Shown piece after piece: positions 19,950 to 31,800 of a stretch of 64,000 nucleotides of DNA. Every line of letters starts with the position of its first letter. Positions within the stretch are counted from its first letter, which is position 1. The stretch spans positions 18,352,001-18,416,000 of the forward strand of contig OZ365112.1 in assembly GCA_977030845.1 (NCBI GenBank), read 5' to 3'. The translations under genes were made by a program, and so were the position numbers. Below the pieces are notes generated by a model. It was not told where the DNA came from and ran no database searches. It saw nothing but the letters and a program-made list of their open reading frames with translations. The DNA is from Fimbriosthenelais zetlandica. Taxonomy: Eukaryota.

Positions 19950-22165
19950 GTTGCTGTAATTCTACGTGAAAGCTTAAATTCGCAATTGTAAATTGGACAG
20001 GATATTGATTTTTATATTGTTCCCATGCCAAAATGGAATATGAATATGACCGCGAGTAGAACAGATTCTCCTCAAAAATTCTCCTATGCCCCATTCTCAT
20101 TGTTTCTAAGCAAACATTCCAAAATATTCAAATCTTTTTGCTACTGCTTTTACTCCAGATTAACCATGCATTCTGTGATTTGGTATAGATTGTATTTACA
20201 TCAAACCAATGTGGATAGAAAGTCTTCCTTTCACAGTCAGTAGTTGGTCCCTCATTTCGCCAAAATGGAATAGAGATAAAAGTAAGCAATACGGATCTAA
20301 TTTTATAGGTCGCATAACTTATTTTTCTGATCTATTTTGAGCTGAATTATCTGTTTCATTTACACAGTCTCATCCTTAATGTACGAAACATCATCAGCTG
20401 ATAATGAATTGCCTAGCTATGCATATCTTTGTAAAATGTCTGACATGAAATCGTCATAATGGTAGACAGTTGAAGGTTATGTATTGATTGACAGATTCTC
20501 ATGTTGATAAACTACAGACATCAGAGTCATTTTTGTGAGAAATTGTGTGCATCTGAGAGTACCTCGACTCAGGGGACCAGAGGCTTGAACAATACATGAC
20601 CTTAAATAAAGGATGGCCTTAAATGGTAACCGTGGACCAATCACTGGTAAGGCACAGGTAGACTTACCAGTTAGTACGAGATATAGGACTATACCTGGTA
20701 ATATTAGGACCATACTTACACTCTGTACCTGTCTATTGTGTGGTGAGAATACTCTTGACATGATCAGTTAGAGAGTTAGCTAAGATAAATTGTATTAGGT
20801 AGGTAAGTGAAAATGCTAACTGTGAAGAGAAGATCTCGCAATTTGTTATTAGATTTGAATCTAAAATTAGTCATAAATTAAAATGTTAAAAGTATTAGGT
20901 GAGTTGAGAGGTTAATGTACTAGATAATGATGAGAGGGTTACTACGAGGCACACGCATCTATATACCATGTAGGGTAGATATCATGAAGCCTATAAATCA
21001 TGTCTGTTGAGGTAAACGTACTAAACGGAAAAATTAATTTTGAATACATTGTATGTTGGAATATAGAAATCTCTTATTCTAGGTCACAAATATTTTTTGC
21101 CATTTCCATGGCTTCCAATCTATTCTATACGCCTATAGCTTAGATAGTCTGTGCTAACCTGTCCTTCCCTGCAAGAGAATTTTCAGTGGAATAAATTAGA
21201 GGAGATTAGCTTTGGTTGATTAATGCTAACCGACAACGTTATTGAAGTGTAAGGATAGTAATAATTGTTATTTTCTTGTGTATTGAGATCAAACTTGCCA
21301 CTCGGAGTGGTTCAGACCATGTGCTAGATGTCATTGTCCAGTTGTAGAACAAGCAATAAAATGTCATTAAATGTATTAATTCCTCACTTGCGTCATTGTA
21401 TTTATTTATTGAGATTGTCTGTAGGGTGTTGTAAAGATAACCAGATATGTTATCATCATAATTATGAGTAGCATGGATCCAAACTAAAGGTATCATATTA
21501 TATCAGTGATGATTGTCATTCTGTGATACTACCATTGGTAGGTCCAGTATCTAACATGACACCAGTCACAACAATGGTCCTATCACTGTCATGACACGCA
21601 TGACTGACATGAAGTCCTGCCCGTTTCTCATCTTCTGTCAGTCACAGTGCCTGCTAAGTCATGTCTGCCCTCTCTACTCCGCCACCAACAGATGACACTG
21701 CATCCTTCACTCTCTGTGCACACACAGCACTTTGTGTGGTATTGCAACAAGACTCCGCTATTCGTCAGAGAGGGAGATATAGGAAAATGAAAGCAATGTA
21801 CCATCAACAGATCACGGACATCTGGCATGTTTGCTGGCTTTTCCTCTGGTGTAAAAAAAGCCCAGATAAATATCTTTAGACGCTATGTAATCTGAGCCCA
21901 TACCCATTTCCCTAGTTTTCTGGTTCCAACATGTAGTGTGAAACATAGTTGACATGATACGCCCCCTCCCTCCTTCCTTCATCTAGCTCTCTCCCCTCCC
22001 TCATTTCCTCTCTCAACCCCCCTGAATTCAGTCCATCTTTGCAAGTGTTAATGAAATTCAAAGTATACCCAGACCCAGAAATGTCTATTCTAATATTTAG
22101 TCTGGGATTAGGCCTACTAGTATCTGAAAAGTGGAGATCGTAGCAGGCATACAGAATCTTTCAGG

Positions 22166-22250
22166 AAAAATAAGCCTTTCCCTAAAAAGGTTCGAACTCC
22201 CCATCTCTGACATCGTGTGCTAGCGCTCTAACCACTTGACCGACTGACAC
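22166..22250 (-). ncRNA. tRNA-derived Pol III element (SINE-head-like), diverged copy
   Basis: The minus strand carries GGTCAAGTGG (A box-like), AGTTCGAACC (B box-like) and a T5 run. Confidence 0.6.
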
Positions 22251-22444
22251 AGGAGTTTATGATCCCTATAGCCAAGGTCCGCTGTGGTAGATGCGTATGA
22301 TCCCCTGCATGGCCCAAGACTTGTTCCCAAACCATATGTAGGCCCTAGTTCACCGTTTCGCCGCTAGAAATCTCGGGTCACCATTGACACGGCAAGCTCT
22401 CTGAGACATCAGGTCAAGCTTTAGACCTTCCCCTTTCCAGTCCT

Positions 22445-22525
22445 GTGCGTCGTGGTGAAGTGGTTAGAGCGCTAACACATGGTGTCGAAGGTCGGGGTTT
22501 CGAACCCTGATCTTGGCTTATTTTT
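22445..22525 (+). ncRNA. tRNA-derived Pol III element, diverged copy
   Basis: TGGTGAAGTGG A box, GGTTTCGAACCC imperfect B box, T5. Confidence 0.6.
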
Positions 22526-22949
22526 ACTGAAAGAATCTTCTTGGCAAACAAGGAACGATCAGAGAGCGTCGAGAGTCAACTCCGCCTGGTGCCGCTTCGG
22601 TCGCCATTGTTGATGATCTCTGTATCTGGGATGACCAGATTCATGGGCCAGCAACATCATCGACCCCAAGCGGGACCAGGCAGAAATGACTCTCGGCGCT
22701 CTGATGCTACCTTGTTTGAGATCCATGTAGTTCATCATCCATGTTGACCTATCTGCAATGGCAGGTTCACAGGTCAAGAGAATAGGCCTACCCAAGCCAA
22801 CGTGCCACCAGTGCCCCTGCTAAGAAGATTCTAATGCTGGTATTCGGTTTGGACCCTGCATTGGCTAAATCATGATAAATAGTTCACCGTTCCGCCGCTA
22901 GGGCCCTTGTCGCTCAGACCTTGTTTGCCAATTAAGGAGATTCTTTCAG

Positions 22950-23035
22950 AAAAAATAAGCGTTCCCAAATCAGGGTTCGAACCGGCGACCTCTTACACAG
23001 TGTGCTAGCGCTCTAGCCACTTGACCACGAGGCAC
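22950..23035 (-). ncRNA. tRNA-derived Pol III element
   Basis: A box TGGTCAAGTGG, B box GGTTCGAACCC, T6 terminator; tRNA-length arms but poor acceptor and anticodon stems. Confidence 0.75.
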
Positions 23036-23939
23036 ATGACTGGGGTTGGGCGGTGTAAAACTTGGTCTGATGTCTCACAGAGCTTGCCGTCCCCTTCAAC
23101 GCTCCTCCTCCTCTACAAACCTGCCGCGCATGCCCACTGAAGCTCCTTGATCACTGAAGCGTTGAAAAAGTTGAAGCTATTTCGGGCCAAATTTCTCTCC
23201 AAGTTTACCTCCTCCCATGATCCTTTGCAGCTCGATTTCTAGAAAGTTGAATATCTCTGCAATTAAAGGCTCAAAAAATACAAAATAAACGGATTATTCT
23301 TAGTTGGAAGGTACTCTAAATGCTGACCATGTTTTTGAAGCGAAAAAATTCATTTAAAATTTCAGTTTTTGAAAATGAGCTCATTTTCACACATTAGCAT
23401 GGATCTCTATGGAGGGAGCAAGCCAGAGCGACAGTGGCGACCCGAGATTTCTAGCGGCGAAACGGTGAACTACCGAGCCGGTTTGGACCCTGCGTTGGCT
23501 AGATCAAGATAAATAGTTCACCGTTTCGCCGCTAGGGCCTCTGTCCCTCAGGCTTGCTCCATCCATAGAGATCAATGCCAATGTGGGAAAATGAGCTCAT
23601 TTTCAAAAACTGAAATTTTAAATCAATTTTCTCACTTCAAAAACATGGTCAGCATTTAGAGTACCTTCCAACTAAGAATAATCCGTTTATTTTGTATTTT
23701 TTGAGCCCTTAATTGCAGAGATATTCAACTTTCTAGAAATCGAGCTGCAAAGGATCATGGGAGGAGGTAAACTTGGAGAGAAATTTAGCCCGAAATAGCT
23801 TCAACTTTTTCAACGCTTCAGTGATCAAGGAGCTTCAGTGGGCATGCGCGGCAGGTTTGTAGAGGAGGAGGAGCGTTGAAGGGGACGGCAAGCTCTGTGA
23901 GACATCAGACCAAGTTTTACACCGCCCAACCCCAGTCAT

Positions 23940-24025
23940 GTGCCTTGTGGTCAAGTGGTTAGAGCGCTAGCACACTGTGTAAGAGGTCGCCGGTTCGAAC
24001 CCTGATTTGGGAAGGATTATTTTTT
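23940..24025 (+). ncRNA. tRNA-derived Pol III element
   Basis: A box 23948-23958, B box 23992-24002, T6 at 24020-24025. Confidence 0.75.
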
Positions 24026-24440
24026 CTGAACAATCTCCTTAATTGGCAAACAATGCCTGAGCGACAAGGGCCCTAGCGGCGGAACGGTGAACTATTTATC
24101 ATGATTTAGCCAACGCAGAGTCCAAACCGAATACCAGCATTATTATCCGAGTCGGCAAGGTAGTTCACCGTCAGAGCGTCGAGAGTCAACTCCGCCTGGT
24201 GCCGTTTCGGTCGCCATTGTTGATGATCTCTGTATCTGGGATTACCAGATTCATGGGCCACCACCATCAGCGACCCCAAGCGGCACCAGGCCGAACTGAC
24301 TGTCGCCACTCTGATGCTACCTTGTTTGAGATCATGTAGTTCATCATCCATGTTGGCCTATCTGCATTGGAATGTTCACCGGCCAAGAGAATACCCAAGC
24401 AAACATGCCACCACTGCCCCAGCCAATAAGATTCTTTCAG

Positions 24441-24526
24441 AAAAAATAAGCCTTCCCAAAACAGGGTTCGAACCGGCTACCTCTTACACAGTGTGCTAGC
24501 GCTCTAACCACTTGACCACAAGGCAC
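24441..24526 (-). ncRNA. tRNA-derived Pol III element
   Basis: Same A box, B box and T6 layout on the minus strand. Confidence 0.75.
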
Positions 24527-25430
24527 ATGACTGGGGATGGGCGGTGTAAAACTTGGTCTGATGTCTCACAGAGCTTGCCGTCCCCTTCAACGCTCCTCCT
24601 CCTCTACAAACCTGCCGCGCATGCCCACTGAAGCTCCTTGATCACTGAAGCGTTGAAAAAGTTGAAGCTATTTCGGGCCAAATTTCTCTCCAAGTTTACC
24701 TCCTCCCATGATCCTTTGCAGCTCGATTTCTAGAAAGTTGAATATCTCTGCAATTAAAGGCTCAAAAAATACAAAATAAACGGATTATTCTTAGTTGGAA
24801 GGTACTCTAAATGCTGACCATGTTTTTGAAGCGAAAAAATTCATTTAAAATTTCAGTTTTTGAAAATGAGCTCATTTTCACACATTAGCATGGATCTCTA
24901 TGGAGGGAGCAAGCCAGAGCGACAGTGGCGACCCGAGATTTCTAGCGGCGAAACGGTGAACTACCGAGCCGGTTTGGACCCTGCGTTGGCTAGATCAAGA
25001 TAAATAGTTCACCGTTTCGCCGCTAGGGCCTCTGTCCCTCAGGCTTGCTCCATCCATAGAGATCAATGCCAATGTGGGAAAATGAGCTCATTTTCAAAAA
25101 CTGAAATTTTAAATCAATTTTCTCACTTCAAAAACATGGTCAGCATTTAGAGTACCTTCCAACTAAGAATAATCCGTTTATTTTGTATTTTTTGAGCCCT
25201 TAATTGCAGAGATATTCAACTTTCTAGAAATCGAGCTGCAAAGGATCATGGGAGGAGGTAAACTTGGAGAGAAATTTAGCCCGAAATAGCTTCAACTTTT
25301 TCAACGCTTCAGTGATCAAGGAGCTTCAGTGGGCATGCGCGGCAGGTTTGTAGAGGAGGAGGAGCGTTGAAGGGGACGGCAAGCTCTGTGAGACATCAGA
25401 CCAAGTTTTACACCGCCCAACCCCAGTCAT

Positions 25431-25516
25431 GTGCCTCGTGGTCAAGTGGTTAGAGCGCTAGCACACTGTGTAAGAGGTCGCCGGTTCGAACCCTGATTTG
25501 GGAAGGATTATTTTTT
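25431..25516 (+). ncRNA. tRNA-derived Pol III element
   Basis: A box, B box, T6. Confidence 0.75.
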
Positions 25517-25932
25517 CTGAAACAATCTCCTTAATTGGCAAACAATGCCTGAGCGACAAGGGCCCTAGCGGCGGAACGGTGAACTATTTATCATGATTTA
25601 GCCAACGCAGGGTCCAAACCGAATACCAGCATTATTATCCGAGTCGGCAATGTAGTTCACCGTCAGAGCGTCGAGAGTCAACTCCGCCTGGTGCCGCTTC
25701 GGTCGCCATTGTTGATGATTTCTGTATCTGGGATTACGAGATTCATGGGCCACCACCATCAGCGACCCCAAGCGGCACCAGGCCGAACTGACTGTCGCCA
25801 CTCTGATGCTACCTTGTTTGAGATCATGTAGTTCATCATCCATGTTGACCTATCTGCATTGGAAGGTTCACCGTCCAAGAGCATACCCAAGCCAACATGC
25901 CAGCACTGCCCCAGCCAATAAGATTCTTTCAG

Positions 25933-26018
25933 AAAAAATAAGCCTTCCCAAAACAGGGTTCGAACCGGCTACCTCTTACACAGTGTGCTAGCGCTCTAAC
26001 CACTTGACCACGAGGCAC
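25933..26018 (-). ncRNA. tRNA-derived Pol III element
   Basis: A box, B box, T6 on the minus strand. Confidence 0.75.
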
Positions 26019-26933
26019 ATGACTGGGGATGTGCGGTGTAAAACTTGGTCTGATGTCTCACAGAGCTTGCCGTCCCCTTCAACGCTCCTCCTCCTCTACA
26101 AACCTGCCGCGCATGCCCACTGAAGCTCCTTGATCACTGAAGCGTTGAAAAAGTTGAAGCTATTTCGGGCCAAATTTCTCTCCAAGTTTACCTCCTCCCA
26201 TGATCCTTTGCAGCTCGATTTCTAGAAAGTTGAATATCTCTGCAATTAAGGGCTCAAAAAATACAAAATAAACGGATTATTCTTAATTGGAAGGTACTCT
26301 AAATGCTGACCATGTTTTTGAAGCGAGAAAATTGATTTAAAATTTCAGTTTTTGAAAATGAGCTCATTTTCCCACATTGGCATTGATCTCAATGGATGGA
26401 GCAAGCCTGAGGGACAGAGGCCCTAGCGGCGAAACGGTGAACTACTTATCATGATCTAGCCAACGCAGGGTCCAAACCGAATACCAGCCGGCTCGGTAGT
26501 TCACCGTTTCGCCGCTAGAAATCTCGGGTCGCCACTGTCGCCCTGGCTTGCTCCCTCCATAGAGATCCATGCTAATGTGTGAAAATGAGCTCATTTTCAA
26601 AAACTGAAATTTTAAATCAATTTTCTCGCTTCAAAAACATGGTCAGCATTTAGAGTACCTTCCAACTAAGAATAATCCGTTTATTTTGTATTTTTTGAGC
26701 CTTTAATTGCAGAGATATTCAACTTTCTAGAAATCGAGCTGCAAAGGATCATGGGAGGAGGTAAACTTGGAGAGAAATTTGGCCCGAAATAGCTTCAACT
26801 TTTTCAACGCTTCAGTGATCAAGGAGCTTCAGTGGGCATGCGCAGGAGGTTTGTAGAGGAAGAGGAGCGTTGAAGGGGACGGCAAGCTCTGTGAGACATC
26901 AGACCAAGTTTTACACCGCCCATCCCCAGTCAT

Positions 26934-27019
26934 GTGCCTCGTGGTCAAGTGGTTAGAGCGCTAGCACACTGTGTAAGAGGTCGCCGGTTCGAACCCGGAT
27001 TTGGGAAGGCTTATTTTTT
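26934..27019 (+). ncRNA. tRNA-derived Pol III element
   Basis: A box, B box (T-stem CCGG/CCGG intact in this copy), T6. Confidence 0.75.
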
Positions 27020-27435
27020 CTGAAAGAATCTCCTTAATTGGCAAACAATGCCTGAGCGACAAGGGCCCTAGCGGCGGAACGGTGAACTATTTATCATGAT
27101 TTAGCCAACGCAGGGTCCAAACCGAATACCAGCATTATTAGCCCAGTCGGCAAGGTAGTTCACCGTCAGAGCGTCGAGAGTCAACTCCGCCTGGTGCCGC
27201 TTCGGTCGCCATTGTTGATGATCTCTGTATCTGGGATTACGAGATTCATGGGCCACCACCATCAGCGACCCCAAGCGGCACCAGGCCGAACTGACTGGCG
27301 CCACTCTGATGCTACCTTGTTTGAGATCATGTAGTTCATCATCCATGTTGACCTATCTGCATTGGAAGGTTCACCGTCCAAGAGAATACCCAAGCCAACA
27401 TGCCACTACTGCCCCAGCCAATAAGATTCTTTCAG

Positions 27436-27521
27436 AAAAAATAAGCCTTCCCAAAACAGGGTTCGAACCGGCTACATCTTACACAGTGTGCTAGCGCTCT
27501 AACCACTTGACCACGAGGCAC
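27436..27521 (-). ncRNA. tRNA-derived Pol III element
   Basis: A box, B box, T6 on the minus strand. Confidence 0.75.
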
Positions 27522-28356
27522 ATGACTGGGGATGGCCGGTGTGAAACTTGGTCTGATGTCTGACCTTGATCACTGAAGCGTTGAAAAAGTTGAAGCTATT
27601 TCGGGCTCATTTTCTCTCCAACTTCATATCACGTGATCCTTTGCAGATCGATTTCTAAAAAGTTGAATATCTCTGCAATTAAGGGCTCAAAAAATACAAA
27701 ATAAACGGACCTTTCTTAGTTGGGAAGTACTCTAAATGGTGGCTAGGTTTTTGAAGCGGGAAAATTGATTTAAAATTTTAAGACTTTGAAAATGGGCCCA
27801 TTTTCCCACATTGGCATTGATCTCAATGGATGGAGCAAGCCTGAGGGACAGAGGCCCTAGCGGCGAAACGGTGAACTATTTATCATGATCTAGCCAACGC
27901 AGGGTCCAAACCGAATACCAGCCGGCTCGGTAGTTCACCGTTTCGCCGCTAGAAATCTCGGGTCGCCACTGTCGCCCTGGCTTGCTCCCTCCATAGAGAT
28001 TGTGAAAATGAGCTCATTTTCAAAAACTGAAATTTTAAATCAATTTTCTCGCTTCAAAAACATGGTCAGCATTTAGAGTACCTTCCAACTAAGAATAATC
28101 CGTTTATTTTTTATTTTTTGAGCCCTTAATTGCAGAGATATTCAACTTTCTAGAAATCGAGATGCAAAGGATCATGGGAGGAGGTAAACTTGGAGAGACA
28201 TTTAGCCCGAAATAGCTTCAACTTTTTCAACGCTTCAGTGATCAAGGAGCTTCAGTGGGCATGCGCGGCAGGTTTGTAGAGGAGGAGGAGCGTTGAAGGG
28301 GACGGCAAGCTCTGTGAGACATCAGACCAAGTTTTACACCGCCCAACCCCAGTCAT

Positions 28357-28442
28357 GTGCCTCGTGGTCAAGTGGCTAGAGCGCTAGCACACTGTGTAAG
28401 AGGTCGCCGGTTCGAACCCTGATTTGGGAACGCTTATTTTTT
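28357..28442 (+). ncRNA. tRNA-derived Pol III element
   Basis: A box, B box, T6; shares private variants with the copy at 22950-23035. Confidence 0.75.
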
Positions 28443-28745
28443 CTGAAAGAATCTCCTTAATTGGCAAACAAGGCCTGAGCGTCGAGAGTCAACTCCGCCT
28501 GGTGCCGCTACGGTCGCCATTGTTGATGATCTCTGTATCTGGGATGACCAGATTCACAGGTCACCAACATCAGCGACCCCCAAGCGGCACCAGGCGGAAC
28601 TGACTGTCGCCACTCTGATGCTACCTTGTTTGAGATCATGTAGTTCATCATCCATGTTGACCTATCTGCATTGGCAGGTTCACCGGCCAAGAGAATACCC
28701 AAGCCAACGTGCCACCAGTGCCCCTTCCAAGGAGATTCTTTCAGG

Positions 28746-28830
28746 AAAAATATGCCTTCCCAGATGAAGTTTCGAACTCGCCACCTCTCACTTTGAGCGC
28801 TAGCGCTTTAACCACTTGACTGCGACACAC
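28746..28830 (-). ncRNA. tRNA-derived Pol III element, diverged copy
   Basis: Minus-strand GTCAAGTGGTTAAAGCGC and AGTTCGAAAC, T5. Confidence 0.55.
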
Positions 28831-31800
28831 AGGACTGGAAAAACTCTCTCTTAATCCTGACTAGGATAGTTGGAGTTCCTCAGAATGAGATTTCCCGTGC
28901 GATAGGGATGTCCCCCATGCCCCGCCAGCACATGTATACTTCCCTCCCAAAATTAATTTAAAATCCCTATCGGTCCGCTATGTTAGTTGCGTATGATCCC
29001 CTGCATGAGCCAAGACTTGTTCCCGAGCCATATGTAGTTCACCGTTTCGCCGCTAGAAATCTCGGGTCACTACTGTCGCTCAGGCCTGCTCCTTCCATAG
29101 AGTACAATGCTAACCTGGAAAAATGACTCCATTTTCAAAATTTCAATTTTTAAATCAATTTTATTCATTCCAAAAGTATGTCCTAACATAGTTCAGCTCT
29201 CAACTAAGATTTATCAGATAAGATCGTAATTTTAGGCCCAGTAGTTTTCGAGAAATTAAAGAAATAAAAAAACCGTCATTTTTATCTACTACTTACAAAC
29301 GCTCGAGGCGCGCATAATTACGGCCACTAGAAGAACTAAGTCCCATTGAGTTAACGTTAGCCCCTTAGTTTCATATAATTATATTATCCAAGCTTAGATA
29401 TATATCCTGTGTTGCAGCGGCTCAATATATTGACTGTATTGTGCACATTTTCTGAATGTTCCACTGGATTTGCCGACTCGGGTATCTAGAACCCACCCTG
29501 AGCACGAACCGCGTCGGTGGACATCCACCCGGACATCCACTACACTACTGGCGCTGGCTGATGGCTTCCCTCGAGGAGTCGCGGCGGGGGTAGCTCCTTA
29601 GACATCGAACCTCCCAGTCCGTTCAGCTACCATAGCTGGAATAAGACATTACTCAATACTGGTTTTAATATAGGGCCTACAGACATAGAAAATATATAAC
29701 ATAGGCTATAGGGAATCAGACGCGACTAGCATAGGGAATCAGACCCGTCAACCATAGGTAATTAATAGGGAATCTTATAAATGCATGCCTCGGGCAATTC
29801 TGGGCAAAGCGGATGATTGTTTGTATATATATACGATCCAGAATTGTATGGATGTATTACATGGATTGACAGGGGGTTTGATTTTATAATACTTGTATTT
29901 GCAAGTACACAGAATGATCTATCAGGAAGCTGAAGATTGAATGTGACGTACATGTATTCTTTCCATTTTGCAACTAACAACAAAGACTTTCTTTGTTACT
30001 TTTGAACAAACAAAAAGGTCGAGTCATCTCCATTTGTTGTAAATATGTTTGAAATGAAGGCAAACAAAATTGCGTCGCGAACTTTAGGCTGAGGTGTGTT
30101 ATCTTTGTGTTGATGGAGGTTGCGTTATTTTGTCGTGCCTTCACAGTAAAAGCATACTGTTTCCATTTAGTCGTTTGATCAGCCTATTGCTGTTTGACAA
30201 TATTCATTTCCTAAGGGTATTGGGAGGAAAGACACAAAAGGGCAACAGTTTGGGACTGGTACTCTTGTGATGGATGGGAAGGGGAGTGGGAGATTCTCAA
30301 AGCTTCCTCATAATGTTGATCAATCAAAGAGTGGCTATTTCCTTCTGTAGTCTCGTCATCTTGGAAATATGAACGTCGTGGAGTCCCGGGCCACCGTTTA
30401 AAGATGCGATATTCCATACAGGATTTAGCATATCAGGATAGCCAGCCCATCAGGTGGTCCTAAGCCAGGGATATATCTGTCTCCAACATGAGAGAACAGA
30501 CATTTGATAAAAGCCCGGCCCTCTTTGCACGTTCCAACCATTAATGGGCGCCACTTGAAACACAATAGGCCTGCTGTCTTTTTCCTCGCTCCAAGACAAA
30601 GCTTTAAAACTATTGAACTATCGAGCAAAGAAAAACAGTATGTATCATCTTGAATCCAAATCAAACAAGTCAGACCCATGCCCATCACCAGTATAACGTC
30701 TGCTGGCTGCTTTTTTGATATATCAAAGTACGTGTTGGATTGAGGGAAGGAGATCCTCCTGTATTTCCCGTCATTGTCTTGGGGCGCGTTTCAGCCGTCC
30801 CCTATAAGCCAACCGCTCTGGCTCTAACAACGCCAAACGGGCAGGAACTTTTCATCTCACATCCGACTGGTGTTTTAAGCGGGAAGATTCAGATCAATGG
30901 AAAAAACAGAGAGTGGAAAGCTTCTCACGCCGACCACATCCCAACCAGTGGATTGATTGCACCAAACAATATCAGTTTACAGGGCCAGAACGCGCTCCCT
31001 CCCACCAACGTCACGCGCCACCATAGGAACAAGTTGAAGTGTCGTCTGGAGATTCTCTCACCAAACCTTGAAGTTTGCTGAATTCCCACCTCTTTGCACA
31101 ACATCAAAAGCGTCGCCCTTACTGAGGTCAATTTCTTGATAGAGTTTTCGATCAATGATAGCCTAATACAATCCTATAATTCTAATAAATGGAAAATGTC
31201 ATGACAATGTTTTAGGGGAAGGGGCACAGAATGGTATCTGGTAAATCCTGTGGAATCTGAAATCGTTGAGAAAGTATTGATTGAATGGAAATTAATACAA
31301 ACGGAAGTAAAATATATATTTTTCTCCGTAAGGGAAAGAGCATAGTGTATTTTTAAGACAAAGGGCGACAGAAGTTCCTCGCCATAATTGGACAGCACTT
31401 CAATGTCGATATCTTGTATTCTAATGTAAGTCGATAACTCCGACAAAAGCACTTTCCTTTCCGACGATTAATCCCTAACATCCGGGGATCATTATTGATG
31501 AAAGTAAATGGAGTTGACACAGTCGAGAGAGAGCATAGTATGGCGCGCCTTTGTGTAATAAATTGATTACTTTTCATCTGCTTATTTTTTAGGCATGTTA
31601 TTCGGGATAGCTGCTTTTCAGACAAGGCAAGGGATGTGACTTTGCATATGAGAGGAGGAGATGGTATCGAACAATCAAGAAATGTTGTAATGGATGCAGG
31701 CAAATCAATTATGAACAATGTTTGAAATAGTGAGTAATAAAAGAGCAATTATTTTTGCGGTGCAATATTTTTCAGCATTCTCATAATATTGTAAATTGGT

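What the first reader, a model, noticed from the sequence alone, without database searches (positions are those of the whole stretch)
22833..28454. Tandem array of kilobase palindromes capped by outward-facing tRNA-like Pol III units
There are four units of about 1.5 kb. Each is a 1.0-1.3-kb near-perfect inverted repeat whose two ends carry an A-box/B-box/T6 cassette of about 86 nt pointing outward, so neighbouring palindromes present convergent Pol III units across a 0.3-0.4-kb spacer. The cassette keeps tRNA arm lengths but is not a functional tRNA. This is neither a simple satellite nor a normal dispersed SINE. It could be a SINE-derived foldback satellite, a small-RNA gene cluster, or a hairpin dsRNA (endo-siRNA/piRNA) source if transcribed through, for example by PPA read-through.
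Basis: partly seen in the sequence, partly recalled or inferred. Interest (0 to 1): 0.75.

Follow-up and report, generated by a model that had tools for sequence, protein, structure and literature searches.

The report
Tandem array of tRNA-tipped foldback repeats
A non-coding stretch between two animal genes holds four tandem copies of a hairpin-shaped repeat whose arm tips carry decayed tRNA-like modules; it belongs to a repeat family common in this genome, and no function could be shown.

Summary
Window 22827-28486 holds four tandem units with periods of 1491, 1492, 1503 and 1423 nt. Each unit is an inverted repeat; arm identity is 96.3-96.6% in units 1-3 and 90.3% in unit 4. Each arm ends in an outward-facing box A / box B / T6 cassette, eight in all. 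ARAGORN and Rfam do not call any of them a tRNA.

It is not a one-off. Every module is a repeat found elsewhere in the genome:
- The arm body is a dispersed repeat.
- The tRNA-like module has about 40-60 copies.
- The "convergent pair plus spacer" also exists alone as a ~440-nt foldback.

The same unit recurs in at least five other small clusters, all on this chromosome at 17.1-20.5 Mb. A larger 2.56-kb sister family has the same design but a different tRNA-like cap; 54 of its 56 close matches lie on this chromosome at 12-23 Mb.

Best reading: a non-coding, genome-specific foldback composite repeat amplified by tandem and block duplication. Arm-to-arm conversion and recombination that flips the centre explain the details.

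No sequencing run was listed, so transcription, small RNAs and read support are untested. The scan has noted tRNA-tipped foldbacks before on other DNA of this genome.

The parts
22153..22241 (-). Old, partial tRNA-like module (T) at the far left edge, ~80% identical to the array's T
   Evidence: exact 26-mer match at 22215-22240
22393..22542 (+). Old inward-facing T module bounding the array on the left (77% to array T; 90.6% to the equivalent boundary module of the sister cluster L030)
22563..22823 (+). Boundary spacer S0: hairpin part plus right part, 89-91% identical to internal spacers
22832..22933 (-). Inverted copy of the spacer's left insert (carries a copy of the centre module X); extends unit 1's palindrome to ~1.3 kb
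   Evidence: (I25)
22934..24040 (.). Unit 1 palindrome: T(-) 22934-23086, arm body C 23085-23472, centre core 23473-23513, C 23514-23890, T(+) 23889-24040. Arms 96.6% identical. Centre is flipped relative to the family's majority state
24041..24435 (+). Spacer 1: left insert 24041-24169 (a copy of centre module X with its 22-nt inverted ends), 141-nt hairpin 24170-24310, right part 24311-24428. Read on the minus strand, the right part and hairpin follow the next unit's T, as in the stand-alone foldbacks at L025/L027
   Evidence: hairpin -41.1 kcal/mol, z -7.3
24436..25532 (.). Unit 2 palindrome (98.8% identical to unit 1 as a direct repeat; arms 96.5%)
25533..25927 (+). Spacer 2, same orientation as spacers 1 and 3 (97-98% identical)
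25928..27035 (.). Unit 3 palindrome. Its centre and inner arms are inverted relative to units 1-2, while the outer T modules keep their side-specific variants. Arms 96.3%; centre core 52 nt
   Evidence: (I3, I5)
27036..27430 (+). Spacer 3
27431..28458 (.). Unit 4 palindrome. Its left arm carries the ~67-nt deletion and the substitutions shared with arms in sister clusters (the ancestral 'delta' arm). Arms 90.3%
28459..28730 (+). Boundary spacer S4, lacking the left insert (an empty site for the X insertion)
28729..28838 (-). Old inward-facing T module bounding the array on the right (77%)
29035..29774 (+). Longer, older relative of the arm body (E-type element). The same element ends the sister clusters L030, L031, L003 and L029

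Best explanation
This is a short tandem array of a non-coding, genome-specific foldback composite repeat. It is neither a gene cluster nor a conventional SINE or satellite.

Each arm joins two repeat modules. The first is a ~380-nt body (C), a short relative of a ~690-nt dispersed element (E). E is itself usually found as inverted pairs. The second is a ~150-nt module (T): a leader plus a decayed tRNA-like sequence that keeps Pol III A and B boxes and a T-run.

Two arms face each other across a small hairpin module (X). Two T modules face each other across a spacer (S). T-S-T also exists alone as a ~440-nt foldback.

Inferred history:
1. A heteropalindromic unit, with one full arm and one arm carrying a 67-nt deletion, arose once.
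2. It was copied as blocks to several places within 3.4 Mb of this chromosome.
3. It was amplified locally by unequal crossing-over.
4. In this window, arm-to-arm gene conversion raised arm identity from about 86-92% to about 96.5% in units 1-3.
5. Recombination between the arms inverted the centre in units 1-2.

Shown: the anatomy, the modular origin, the sister clusters, the arm lineages and the flips. Inferred: the recombination mechanisms and the absence of function.
For: Anatomy and period.

Non-coding: no ORF over 81 aa.

Modules are repeats:
- The C query gives 1182 first-look candidates, with ~82% hits on many chromosomes.
- A conserved C 26-mer has 171 matches on at least 8 contigs against 0 in the control.
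- T gives 64 candidates and 42 pattern matches.
- T-S-T stands alone at L025 (C1) and L027/L028.

The same unit order occurs in L030, L031, L003 and L004 on C13, all ending in the same E element.

Deletion-bearing arms from the window (unit 4 left), L030, L031 and L003 form one clade. The unit therefore predates the spread of the clusters.

Arm identity is 85.7-91.9% in most sister units against 96.3-96.6% in window units 1-3.

Centre orientation relative to the spacer is the same in units 3-4 and in most sister units. It is inverted in units 1-2 and in one L031 unit, so there were at least two flips. Side-specific variants in the outer T modules are not flipped.

Cassettes are intact in all 8 window copies but in only some of the T modules mapped in L030 (2 cassettes found), L031 (4) and L003 (1).

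A sister family with 2.56-kb units has the same design, with E arms (97-99% identical) and a different tRNA-like cap, T2.

Transposon-to-tandem-repeat transitions and foldback-derived satellites are documented (PMC12628747; PMC4079207).
Against: No read-level confirmation of the assembly and no RNA data: none was listed.

I found no target-site duplications or clean insertion boundaries. Mobility of the unit is therefore unproven, and block duplication is only inferred from shared boundary modules.

The outermost arms (unit 1 left, unit 4 right) share derived variants and are 98% complementary (I10, 27). Simple unequal crossing-over does not predict this.

All eight cassettes keep perfect boxes and T6. 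Array youth explains this, but selection would too.
Confidence: 0.7

Rival explanations
1. A functional small-RNA locus. Either each cassette is transcribed by Pol III into an ~85-nt tRNA-like RNA, or read-through transcription folds each ~1.1-kb palindrome into a ~500-bp hairpin that is diced into endo-siRNAs or piRNAs.
For: All eight cassettes have near-consensus A and B boxes 43 nt apart, followed by T6. The boxes are the best-conserved part of T across diverged dispersed copies. The arms would form long hairpins, and the spacer hairpin folds at -41 kcal/mol, z -7.3. A pyrophosphatase exon lies upstream on the same strand.
Against: No RNA data. Cassettes decay in older sister clusters. T is no better conserved than the arm body between clusters. 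The cloverleaf is not formed, and neither ARAGORN nor Rfam calls it. T6 is a recent local change from TTTTCCC.
Confidence: 0.12
2. The alternating-orientation chain arose by successive fold-back (hairpin-primed or template-switch) duplications at the two hairpin modules X and S, doubling the number of arms each time. Tandem duplication of a finished unit would then not be the origin.
For: The array reads as alternately inverted ~745-nt monomers, with a hairpin at each junction type. The arm types show mirror order (alpha-beta, alpha-beta | beta-alpha, delta-alpha). The two outermost arms share derived variants (I10, 27, 36). A dispersed single arm (L010) ends in the same short inverted repeat as the centre.
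Against: The three internal spacers are asymmetric, all in the same orientation, and 97-98% identical with no gaps. A mirror duplication would invert one side. Same-side arms of units 1 and 2 are 98-100% identical, as expected for a direct duplication.
Confidence: 0.1
3. Assembly artefact: foldback chimeric reads or a collapsed or expanded repeat.
For: Palindromes are a known failure mode of long-read assembly, and no reads could be laid on the region.
Against: The arms differ by 3.5-10% and by indels. Units differ from each other. The same architecture recurs in diverged form (85-93%) at five or more other loci, with arm lineages shared between loci.
Confidence: 0.03

Closest known systems
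Foldback transposons that seed tandem repeats (Tetris of Drosophila virilis; FB elements), PMC4079207
   Same: Long inverted arms, no coding capacity, and modular make-up. Copies occur both dispersed and as short tandem arrays that can grow into satellite-like DNA.
   Different: Here the arm tips are tRNA-like Pol III-type modules. The arms are not built of short internal tandem repeats. No autonomous partner, transposase or target-site duplication was identified.
MITE- and transposon-derived tandem arrays and euchromatic satellite-like clusters (e.g. Xstir in Xenopus; review PMC12628747)
   Same: A dispersed non-autonomous element also occurs as tandem arrays. Stem-loop structures are invoked in array formation. 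Small clusters are scattered in gene-containing DNA.
   Different: The unit is 1.5 kb and is itself a composite of two different foldbacks. Only four copies are present here. The distribution is restricted to part of one chromosome.
tRNA-derived SINEs
   Same: tRNA-like module with conserved A and B boxes and a T-run, and no functional cloverleaf.
   Different: Low copy number. A conserved leader lies upstream of the tRNA-like part. No LINE-like or A-rich tail and no target-site duplication was found. The module sits at the tip of a larger repeat and is followed at once by a terminator.
TRIMp3 elements (Cassandra, Helenus, Ajax): small LTR retrotransposons with a small-RNA-derived Pol III promoter in their terminal repeats, PMC10886601
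   Same: The terminal repeats of a non-autonomous element carry a tRNA-like sequence whose promoter boxes are conserved while the tRNA fold is lost. They are reported from lophotrochozoans (molluscs, brachiopods, nemerteans), and tandem arrays have been seen.
   Different: There the terminal repeats are direct and flank a primer-binding site and polypurine tract. Here the repeats are inverted, and the T-run directly after the tRNA-like part would stop Pol III after ~85 nt.
Large genomic palindromes kept alike by arm-to-arm gene conversion (e.g. primate Y-chromosome palindromes; from general knowledge)
   Same: Arm identity is higher than expected from the age of the duplication, and central spacers are inverted by recombination between arms.
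   Different: The scale is ~0.5-kb arms rather than 9 kb to 1.45 Mb. There are no genes in the arms, and the arms are made of repeats.

Membership tests
tRNA gene | Cloverleaf with a paired acceptor stem, recognised by tRNA finders | tested here: not met
   ARAGORN finds 0 genes in the window. Rfam tRNA gives no hit at gathering score or at E<=1. The minimum-free-energy folds are not cloverleaves, with z between -0.1 and -1.1.
tRNA-derived SINE | Internal Pol III promoter (A and B boxes) in a tRNA-like head | tested here: met
   All eight cassettes match a relaxed A-box/B-box pattern. The boxes are near-invariant in 12 dispersed copies.
tRNA-derived SINE | The element starts at the tRNA-like head and ends in a LINE-related, A-rich or simple-repeat tail, flanked by target-site duplications | tested here: not met
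   Dispersed copies share a ~50-nt leader upstream of the head. Many continue upstream into the E element. No tail or duplication was seen at copy ends.
tRNA-derived SINE | High copy number, dispersed | tested here: not met
   64 first-look candidates. 42 matches to a 26-mer with up to 2 mismatches.
Tandem repeat / satellite-like DNA | Head-to-tail repetition of one unit | tested here: met
   Four units with periods of 1491-1503 and 1423 nt. Direct identity between units is 93.6-98.8%. With only four copies this is an array, not a large satellite.
Foldback element | Long inverted arms forming most of the element, non-coding | tested here: met
   Arms of ~520-540 nt around a 41-52-nt core. No ORF over 81 aa.
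Foldback element | Evidence of transposition: same termini at unrelated sites, target-site duplications, empty sites | tested here: inconclusive
   The arm body has a defined inner terminus shared by dispersed copies. The sister clusters share boundary modules with this window, as block duplications would. No duplication was found at the array ends I examined.
TRIMp3 (Helenus-like) | Direct long terminal repeats carrying the tRNA-like sequence, with a primer-binding site and polypurine tract | tested here: not met
   The repeats carrying T are inverted within each unit. I made no systematic search for a primer-binding site or polypurine tract.
Hairpin-RNA / endo-siRNA locus | Transcription through the inverted repeat and small RNAs from the stem | not testable with these tools
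   No sequencing run was listed for this stretch.

The most novel reading that the evidence does not exclude
tRNA-tipped foldbacks may be a distinct class of repeat in which a Pol III-type module at the arm tip is part of how the element works.

The main evidence: the same E arm carries two unrelated tRNA-like modules (T and T2), joined at the same point and in the same outward orientation.

This fits either of two readings:
- Recurrent capture of a Pol III promoter, the inverted-repeat counterpart of TRIMp3 elements.
- Integration of E a fixed ~50-65 nt upstream of tRNA-like genes, followed by co-amplification.

Pol III complexes at the tips could also act as replication-fork barriers that set the palindrome ends and trigger fold-back events.

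The strong restriction of the T and T2 subfamilies to 12-23 Mb of one chromosome could then mark a chromosome-specific repeat landscape.
Probability: 0.2. Interest if true: 0.7.

Novelty: new variant of a known kind. Interest (0 to 1): 0.4.

Why it matters
If this is only what the evidence shows, the finding is a clean, datable example of how dispersed repeats assemble into a palindromic tandem array. It also shows such palindromes being reshaped by arm-to-arm conversion and centre flipping. That is useful for repeat annotation of this genome and as a caution against calling these cassettes tRNA or small-RNA genes.

It would matter more if the tRNA-like tips prove functional, whether as a promoter for mobilisation, an integration target or a fork barrier. 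That would add an inverted-repeat counterpart to the LTR elements that carry Pol III promoters. It would also explain why two unrelated tRNA-like modules occupy the same position.

Tried and rejected
- **Tandem Repeats Finder** returned nothing because the period exceeds its 500-nt limit. The repeat finder was used instead.
- **Rfam at E<=1** gave only a both-strand match of the spacer hairpin to the plant family MIR5084: 38.9 bits against a gathering score of 110. I treat this as a generic long-hairpin match, not a miRNA.
- **RNA folds** of the cassettes are not cloverleaves and are not more stable than shuffles.
- **ORF scan and Pfam** on the array and flanks found no domains.
- **The look-up of sequencing runs** listed no run. 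Read laying was therefore not used, and neither assembly support nor expression could be checked.
- **Target-site duplications** were sought at the ends of the stand-alone T-S-T copies and of a clean T2/E array, without result.
- **Mirror (inverted) duplication of a two-unit block** was considered because of the mirror order of arm types. I rejected it as the last step because the spacers are all direct.
- **TRIMp3 membership** was considered after PMC10886601 and rejected because the repeats are inverted.
- **Literature searches** for tRNA-like terminal inverted repeats or tRNA-tipped foldbacks found no described equivalent. This library is not exhaustive, and no Dfam/Repbase comparison was possible.
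Full report
**1. What is there**

The window is G000:C13:18352001-18416000 of a 447-Mb animal genome. Between about 22.1 and 29.8 kb lies a block of nested repeats.

Its core, 22827-28486, is four tandem units with periods of 1491, 1492, 1503 and 1423 nt. Each contains an inverted repeat with ~500-nt arms and a ~100-nt loop. Tandem Repeats Finder missed it only because its period limit is 500.

Arm-to-arm identity is 96.6, 96.5 and 96.3% in units 1-3. In unit 4 it is 90.3%, because the left arm has a ~67-nt deletion and many substitutions. As direct repeats, units 1 and 2 are 98.8% identical. The other pairs are 93.6-96.5% identical.

A pattern scan finds exactly eight box A / box B / T-run cassettes in the 64-kb window. 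All have T6, all sit at arm tips, and all point outward. ARAGORN and Rfam do not recognise them as tRNA, even at E<=1. Their folds are neither cloverleaves nor unusually stable.

The block has no ORF above 81 aa.

**2. Anatomy in modules**

Mapping the unit against itself and against the genome splits it into modules:
- **T**, ~150 nt: a ~50-nt leader plus the tRNA-like part and the T-run.
- **C**, ~380 nt: the arm body.
- **X**: the centre. It has a 41-52-nt asymmetric core between perfect 22-23-nt inverted ends (DNA fold z about -6.5).
- **S**, 395 nt: the spacer. It has three parts.
  - A left insert that is a second copy of X.
  - A 141-nt hairpin (-41 kcal/mol, z -7.3).
  - A right part.

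The order along the array is: T(-) C X C T(+) S, then T(-) again.

At both ends the array is bracketed by older, inward-facing T modules (22393-22542 and 28729-28838, 77% identical). On the right it is followed by a longer C-like element at 29035-29774.

The right boundary spacer lacks the left insert. This shows the empty state of that X insertion.

**3. Every module is a repeat known elsewhere in the genome**

*Arm body C.* It gives 1182 first-look candidates, with ~82% matches on many chromosomes. A conserved 26-mer has 171 matches on at least eight contigs, against none for the reversed control.

Dispersed copies share a sharp inner terminus ending in GGTGAACTA. This is exactly where the palindrome centre begins.

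C is a short relative of a ~690-nt element, E. Elsewhere, C/E copies commonly occur as facing inverted pairs 350-590 nt apart, or as tight palindromes such as L009 and L013.

*Module T.* It is low-copy: 64 candidates and 42 pattern matches. In 12 diverged copies the A-box and B-box regions are near-invariant, while the leader and anticodon region vary. In these copies the T-run reads TTTTCCC, so T6 is a local derivative.

The conserved leader, and in many copies an E element directly upstream, are not what a SINE transcribed from its own head would carry.

*T-S-T.* Read on the minus strand, each left-hand T continues into the spacer. This T-hairpin-inverted-T arrangement exists alone as a ~440-nt foldback on C1 (L025) and at two other C13 sites (L027/L028).

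**4. Sister clusters and a sister family**

The same unit order recurs in small clusters at C13 17.09, 18.90, 19.16, 20.16 and 20.44 Mb, with fragments at 19.40 Mb. Each cluster holds about 1.5-3.5 units, in either orientation. All end in the same E element, and L030 shares the left boundary module at 90.6%. The spacer is found almost only in these clusters.

A larger sister family has 2.56-2.6-kb units of the same design. Its arms are 780-1015-nt E arms (97-99% identical), with a 480-550-nt centre. It carries a different outward-facing tRNA-like cap, T2. Convergent T2 pairs sit across a 120-nt spacer.

T2 is closer to a tRNA than T is. ARAGORN calls it Gln-CTG. Rfam tRNA scores it at 25.7 bits in L004, below the 29-bit threshold, and scores the L016 sequence that ARAGORN calls a tRNA at 37.3 bits, without my having confirmed that this copy is T2-like.

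Of 56 genome matches to a T2 25-mer with at most one mismatch, 54 lie on C13 between 12.2 and 23.4 Mb. C13 is only 9% of the genome.

The E arm of a C19 T-bearing copy aligns with the E arm of a C13 T2-bearing unit over ~685 nt at 82%. The alignment holds up to one shared point, after which each carries its own tRNA-like module.

Earlier notes of this scan describe tRNA-tipped foldbacks on other chromosomes too. The class is genome-wide, while the T and T2 subfamilies are regional.

**5. History inferred from the copies**

In a tree of arm bodies, the deletion-bearing arms form one clade. These are window unit 4 left, two in L030, two in L031 and one in L003. The full arms form another clade. 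So the unit was already a heteropalindrome before the clusters separated, and the clusters are copies of it rather than independent palindrome formations.

Most sister units keep 85.7-91.9% arm identity with ~90 nt of gaps. Window units 1-3 reach about 96.5%, and one L004 unit reaches 95.9%.

In the alignment, the second arm of units 1-3 is delta-like next to the centre but matches the full arm further out. This is the pattern expected from arm-to-arm gene conversion.

The centre has the same orientation as the spacer's X copy in units 3-4 and in nearly all sister units. It has the opposite orientation in units 1-2 and in one L031 unit, so there were at least two flips.

The flip takes the inner arm with it but not the outer T, whose side-specific variants stay in place. 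That is what a crossover between the arms would produce.

The 98.8% identity of units 1 and 2, and the direct, gap-free 97-98% identity of the three spacers, point to unequal crossing-over as the amplifying step.

One feature remains unexplained. The two outermost arms share derived variants and are 98% complementary.

**6. Function**

Nothing shows function. No sequencing run was listed, so transcription, small RNAs and even read support are untested.

Against selection on the cassettes:
- They decay in older clusters.
- T is not better conserved than C between clusters.

The array's CpG observed/expected ratio (0.75) is higher than in its flanks (0.50-0.64). This fits a young sequence.

The array lies between an upstream pyrophosphatase gene and the TCF gene. 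An exon match to the former sits ~14 kb before the window, on the + strand. The latter is at 37.1-48.5 kb according to earlier notes. I did not map the 3' end of the upstream gene.

**7. Comparison with known elements**

The nearest described things are:
- Foldback transposons that seed tandem repeats (Tetris, PMC4079207).
- MITE- or transposon-derived arrays (review PMC12628747).
- For the Pol III-type module in a terminal repeat, the TRIMp3 elements Cassandra, Helenus and Ajax (PMC10886601). Helenus and Ajax are reported from lophotrochozoans, but they have direct repeats, not inverted ones.

My searches of the held literature found no description of tRNA-like modules at the tips of foldback arms. 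No repeat database could be queried.

I therefore rate this a new variant of a known kind, of moderate interest. The more novel reading is that the tRNA-like tip is part of the mechanism. It rests mainly on two unrelated caps occupying the same position and remains unproven.

Noticed in passing
L033:2352-7802 (G000:C13:22316351-22321802); also L032, L034: Sister family with 2.56-2.6-kb tandem units. Each is a palindrome with 780-1015-nt E arms (97-99% identical) capped by outward-facing tRNA-Gln-like T2 modules, with convergent T2 pairs across a 120-nt spacer. About 20 small clusters lie on C13 at 12.2-23.4 Mb.
   Followed up: partly
L004:5836-6241 (G000:C13:19165836-19166241): A T module is cut off just after its B box and fused directly to a T2 module. 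T-type and T2-type arrays therefore abut here. The same adjacency is seen in L029 (C13 17.09 Mb).
   Followed up: partly
L016:1107-1177 (G000:C25:14156906-14156976): A tRNA-like sequence with anticodon CTA (ARAGORN 'Pyl') passes the Rfam tRNA threshold at 37.3 bits. It may be a suppressor-like derivative of the T2/Gln family, or a pseudogene.
   Followed up: no
G000:C2:179204-317826: The C-type 26-mer, with one mismatch, recurs seven times at roughly 17-kb intervals, with one larger gap. This suggests a ~17-kb tandem repeat on a small contig.
   Followed up: no
window 28474-28619 (and the equivalent spacer hairpins): The spacer hairpin gives a weak match on both strands to the plant miRNA family MIR5084 (38.9 bits against a gathering score of 110). 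This reflects a long hairpin typical of inverted-repeat elements, not a miRNA.
   Followed up: yes
G000:C13:18338122-18338466: Inorganic pyrophosphatase exon match on the + strand, ~14 kb upstream of the window start. Its 3' end relative to the array was not mapped.
   Followed up: partly
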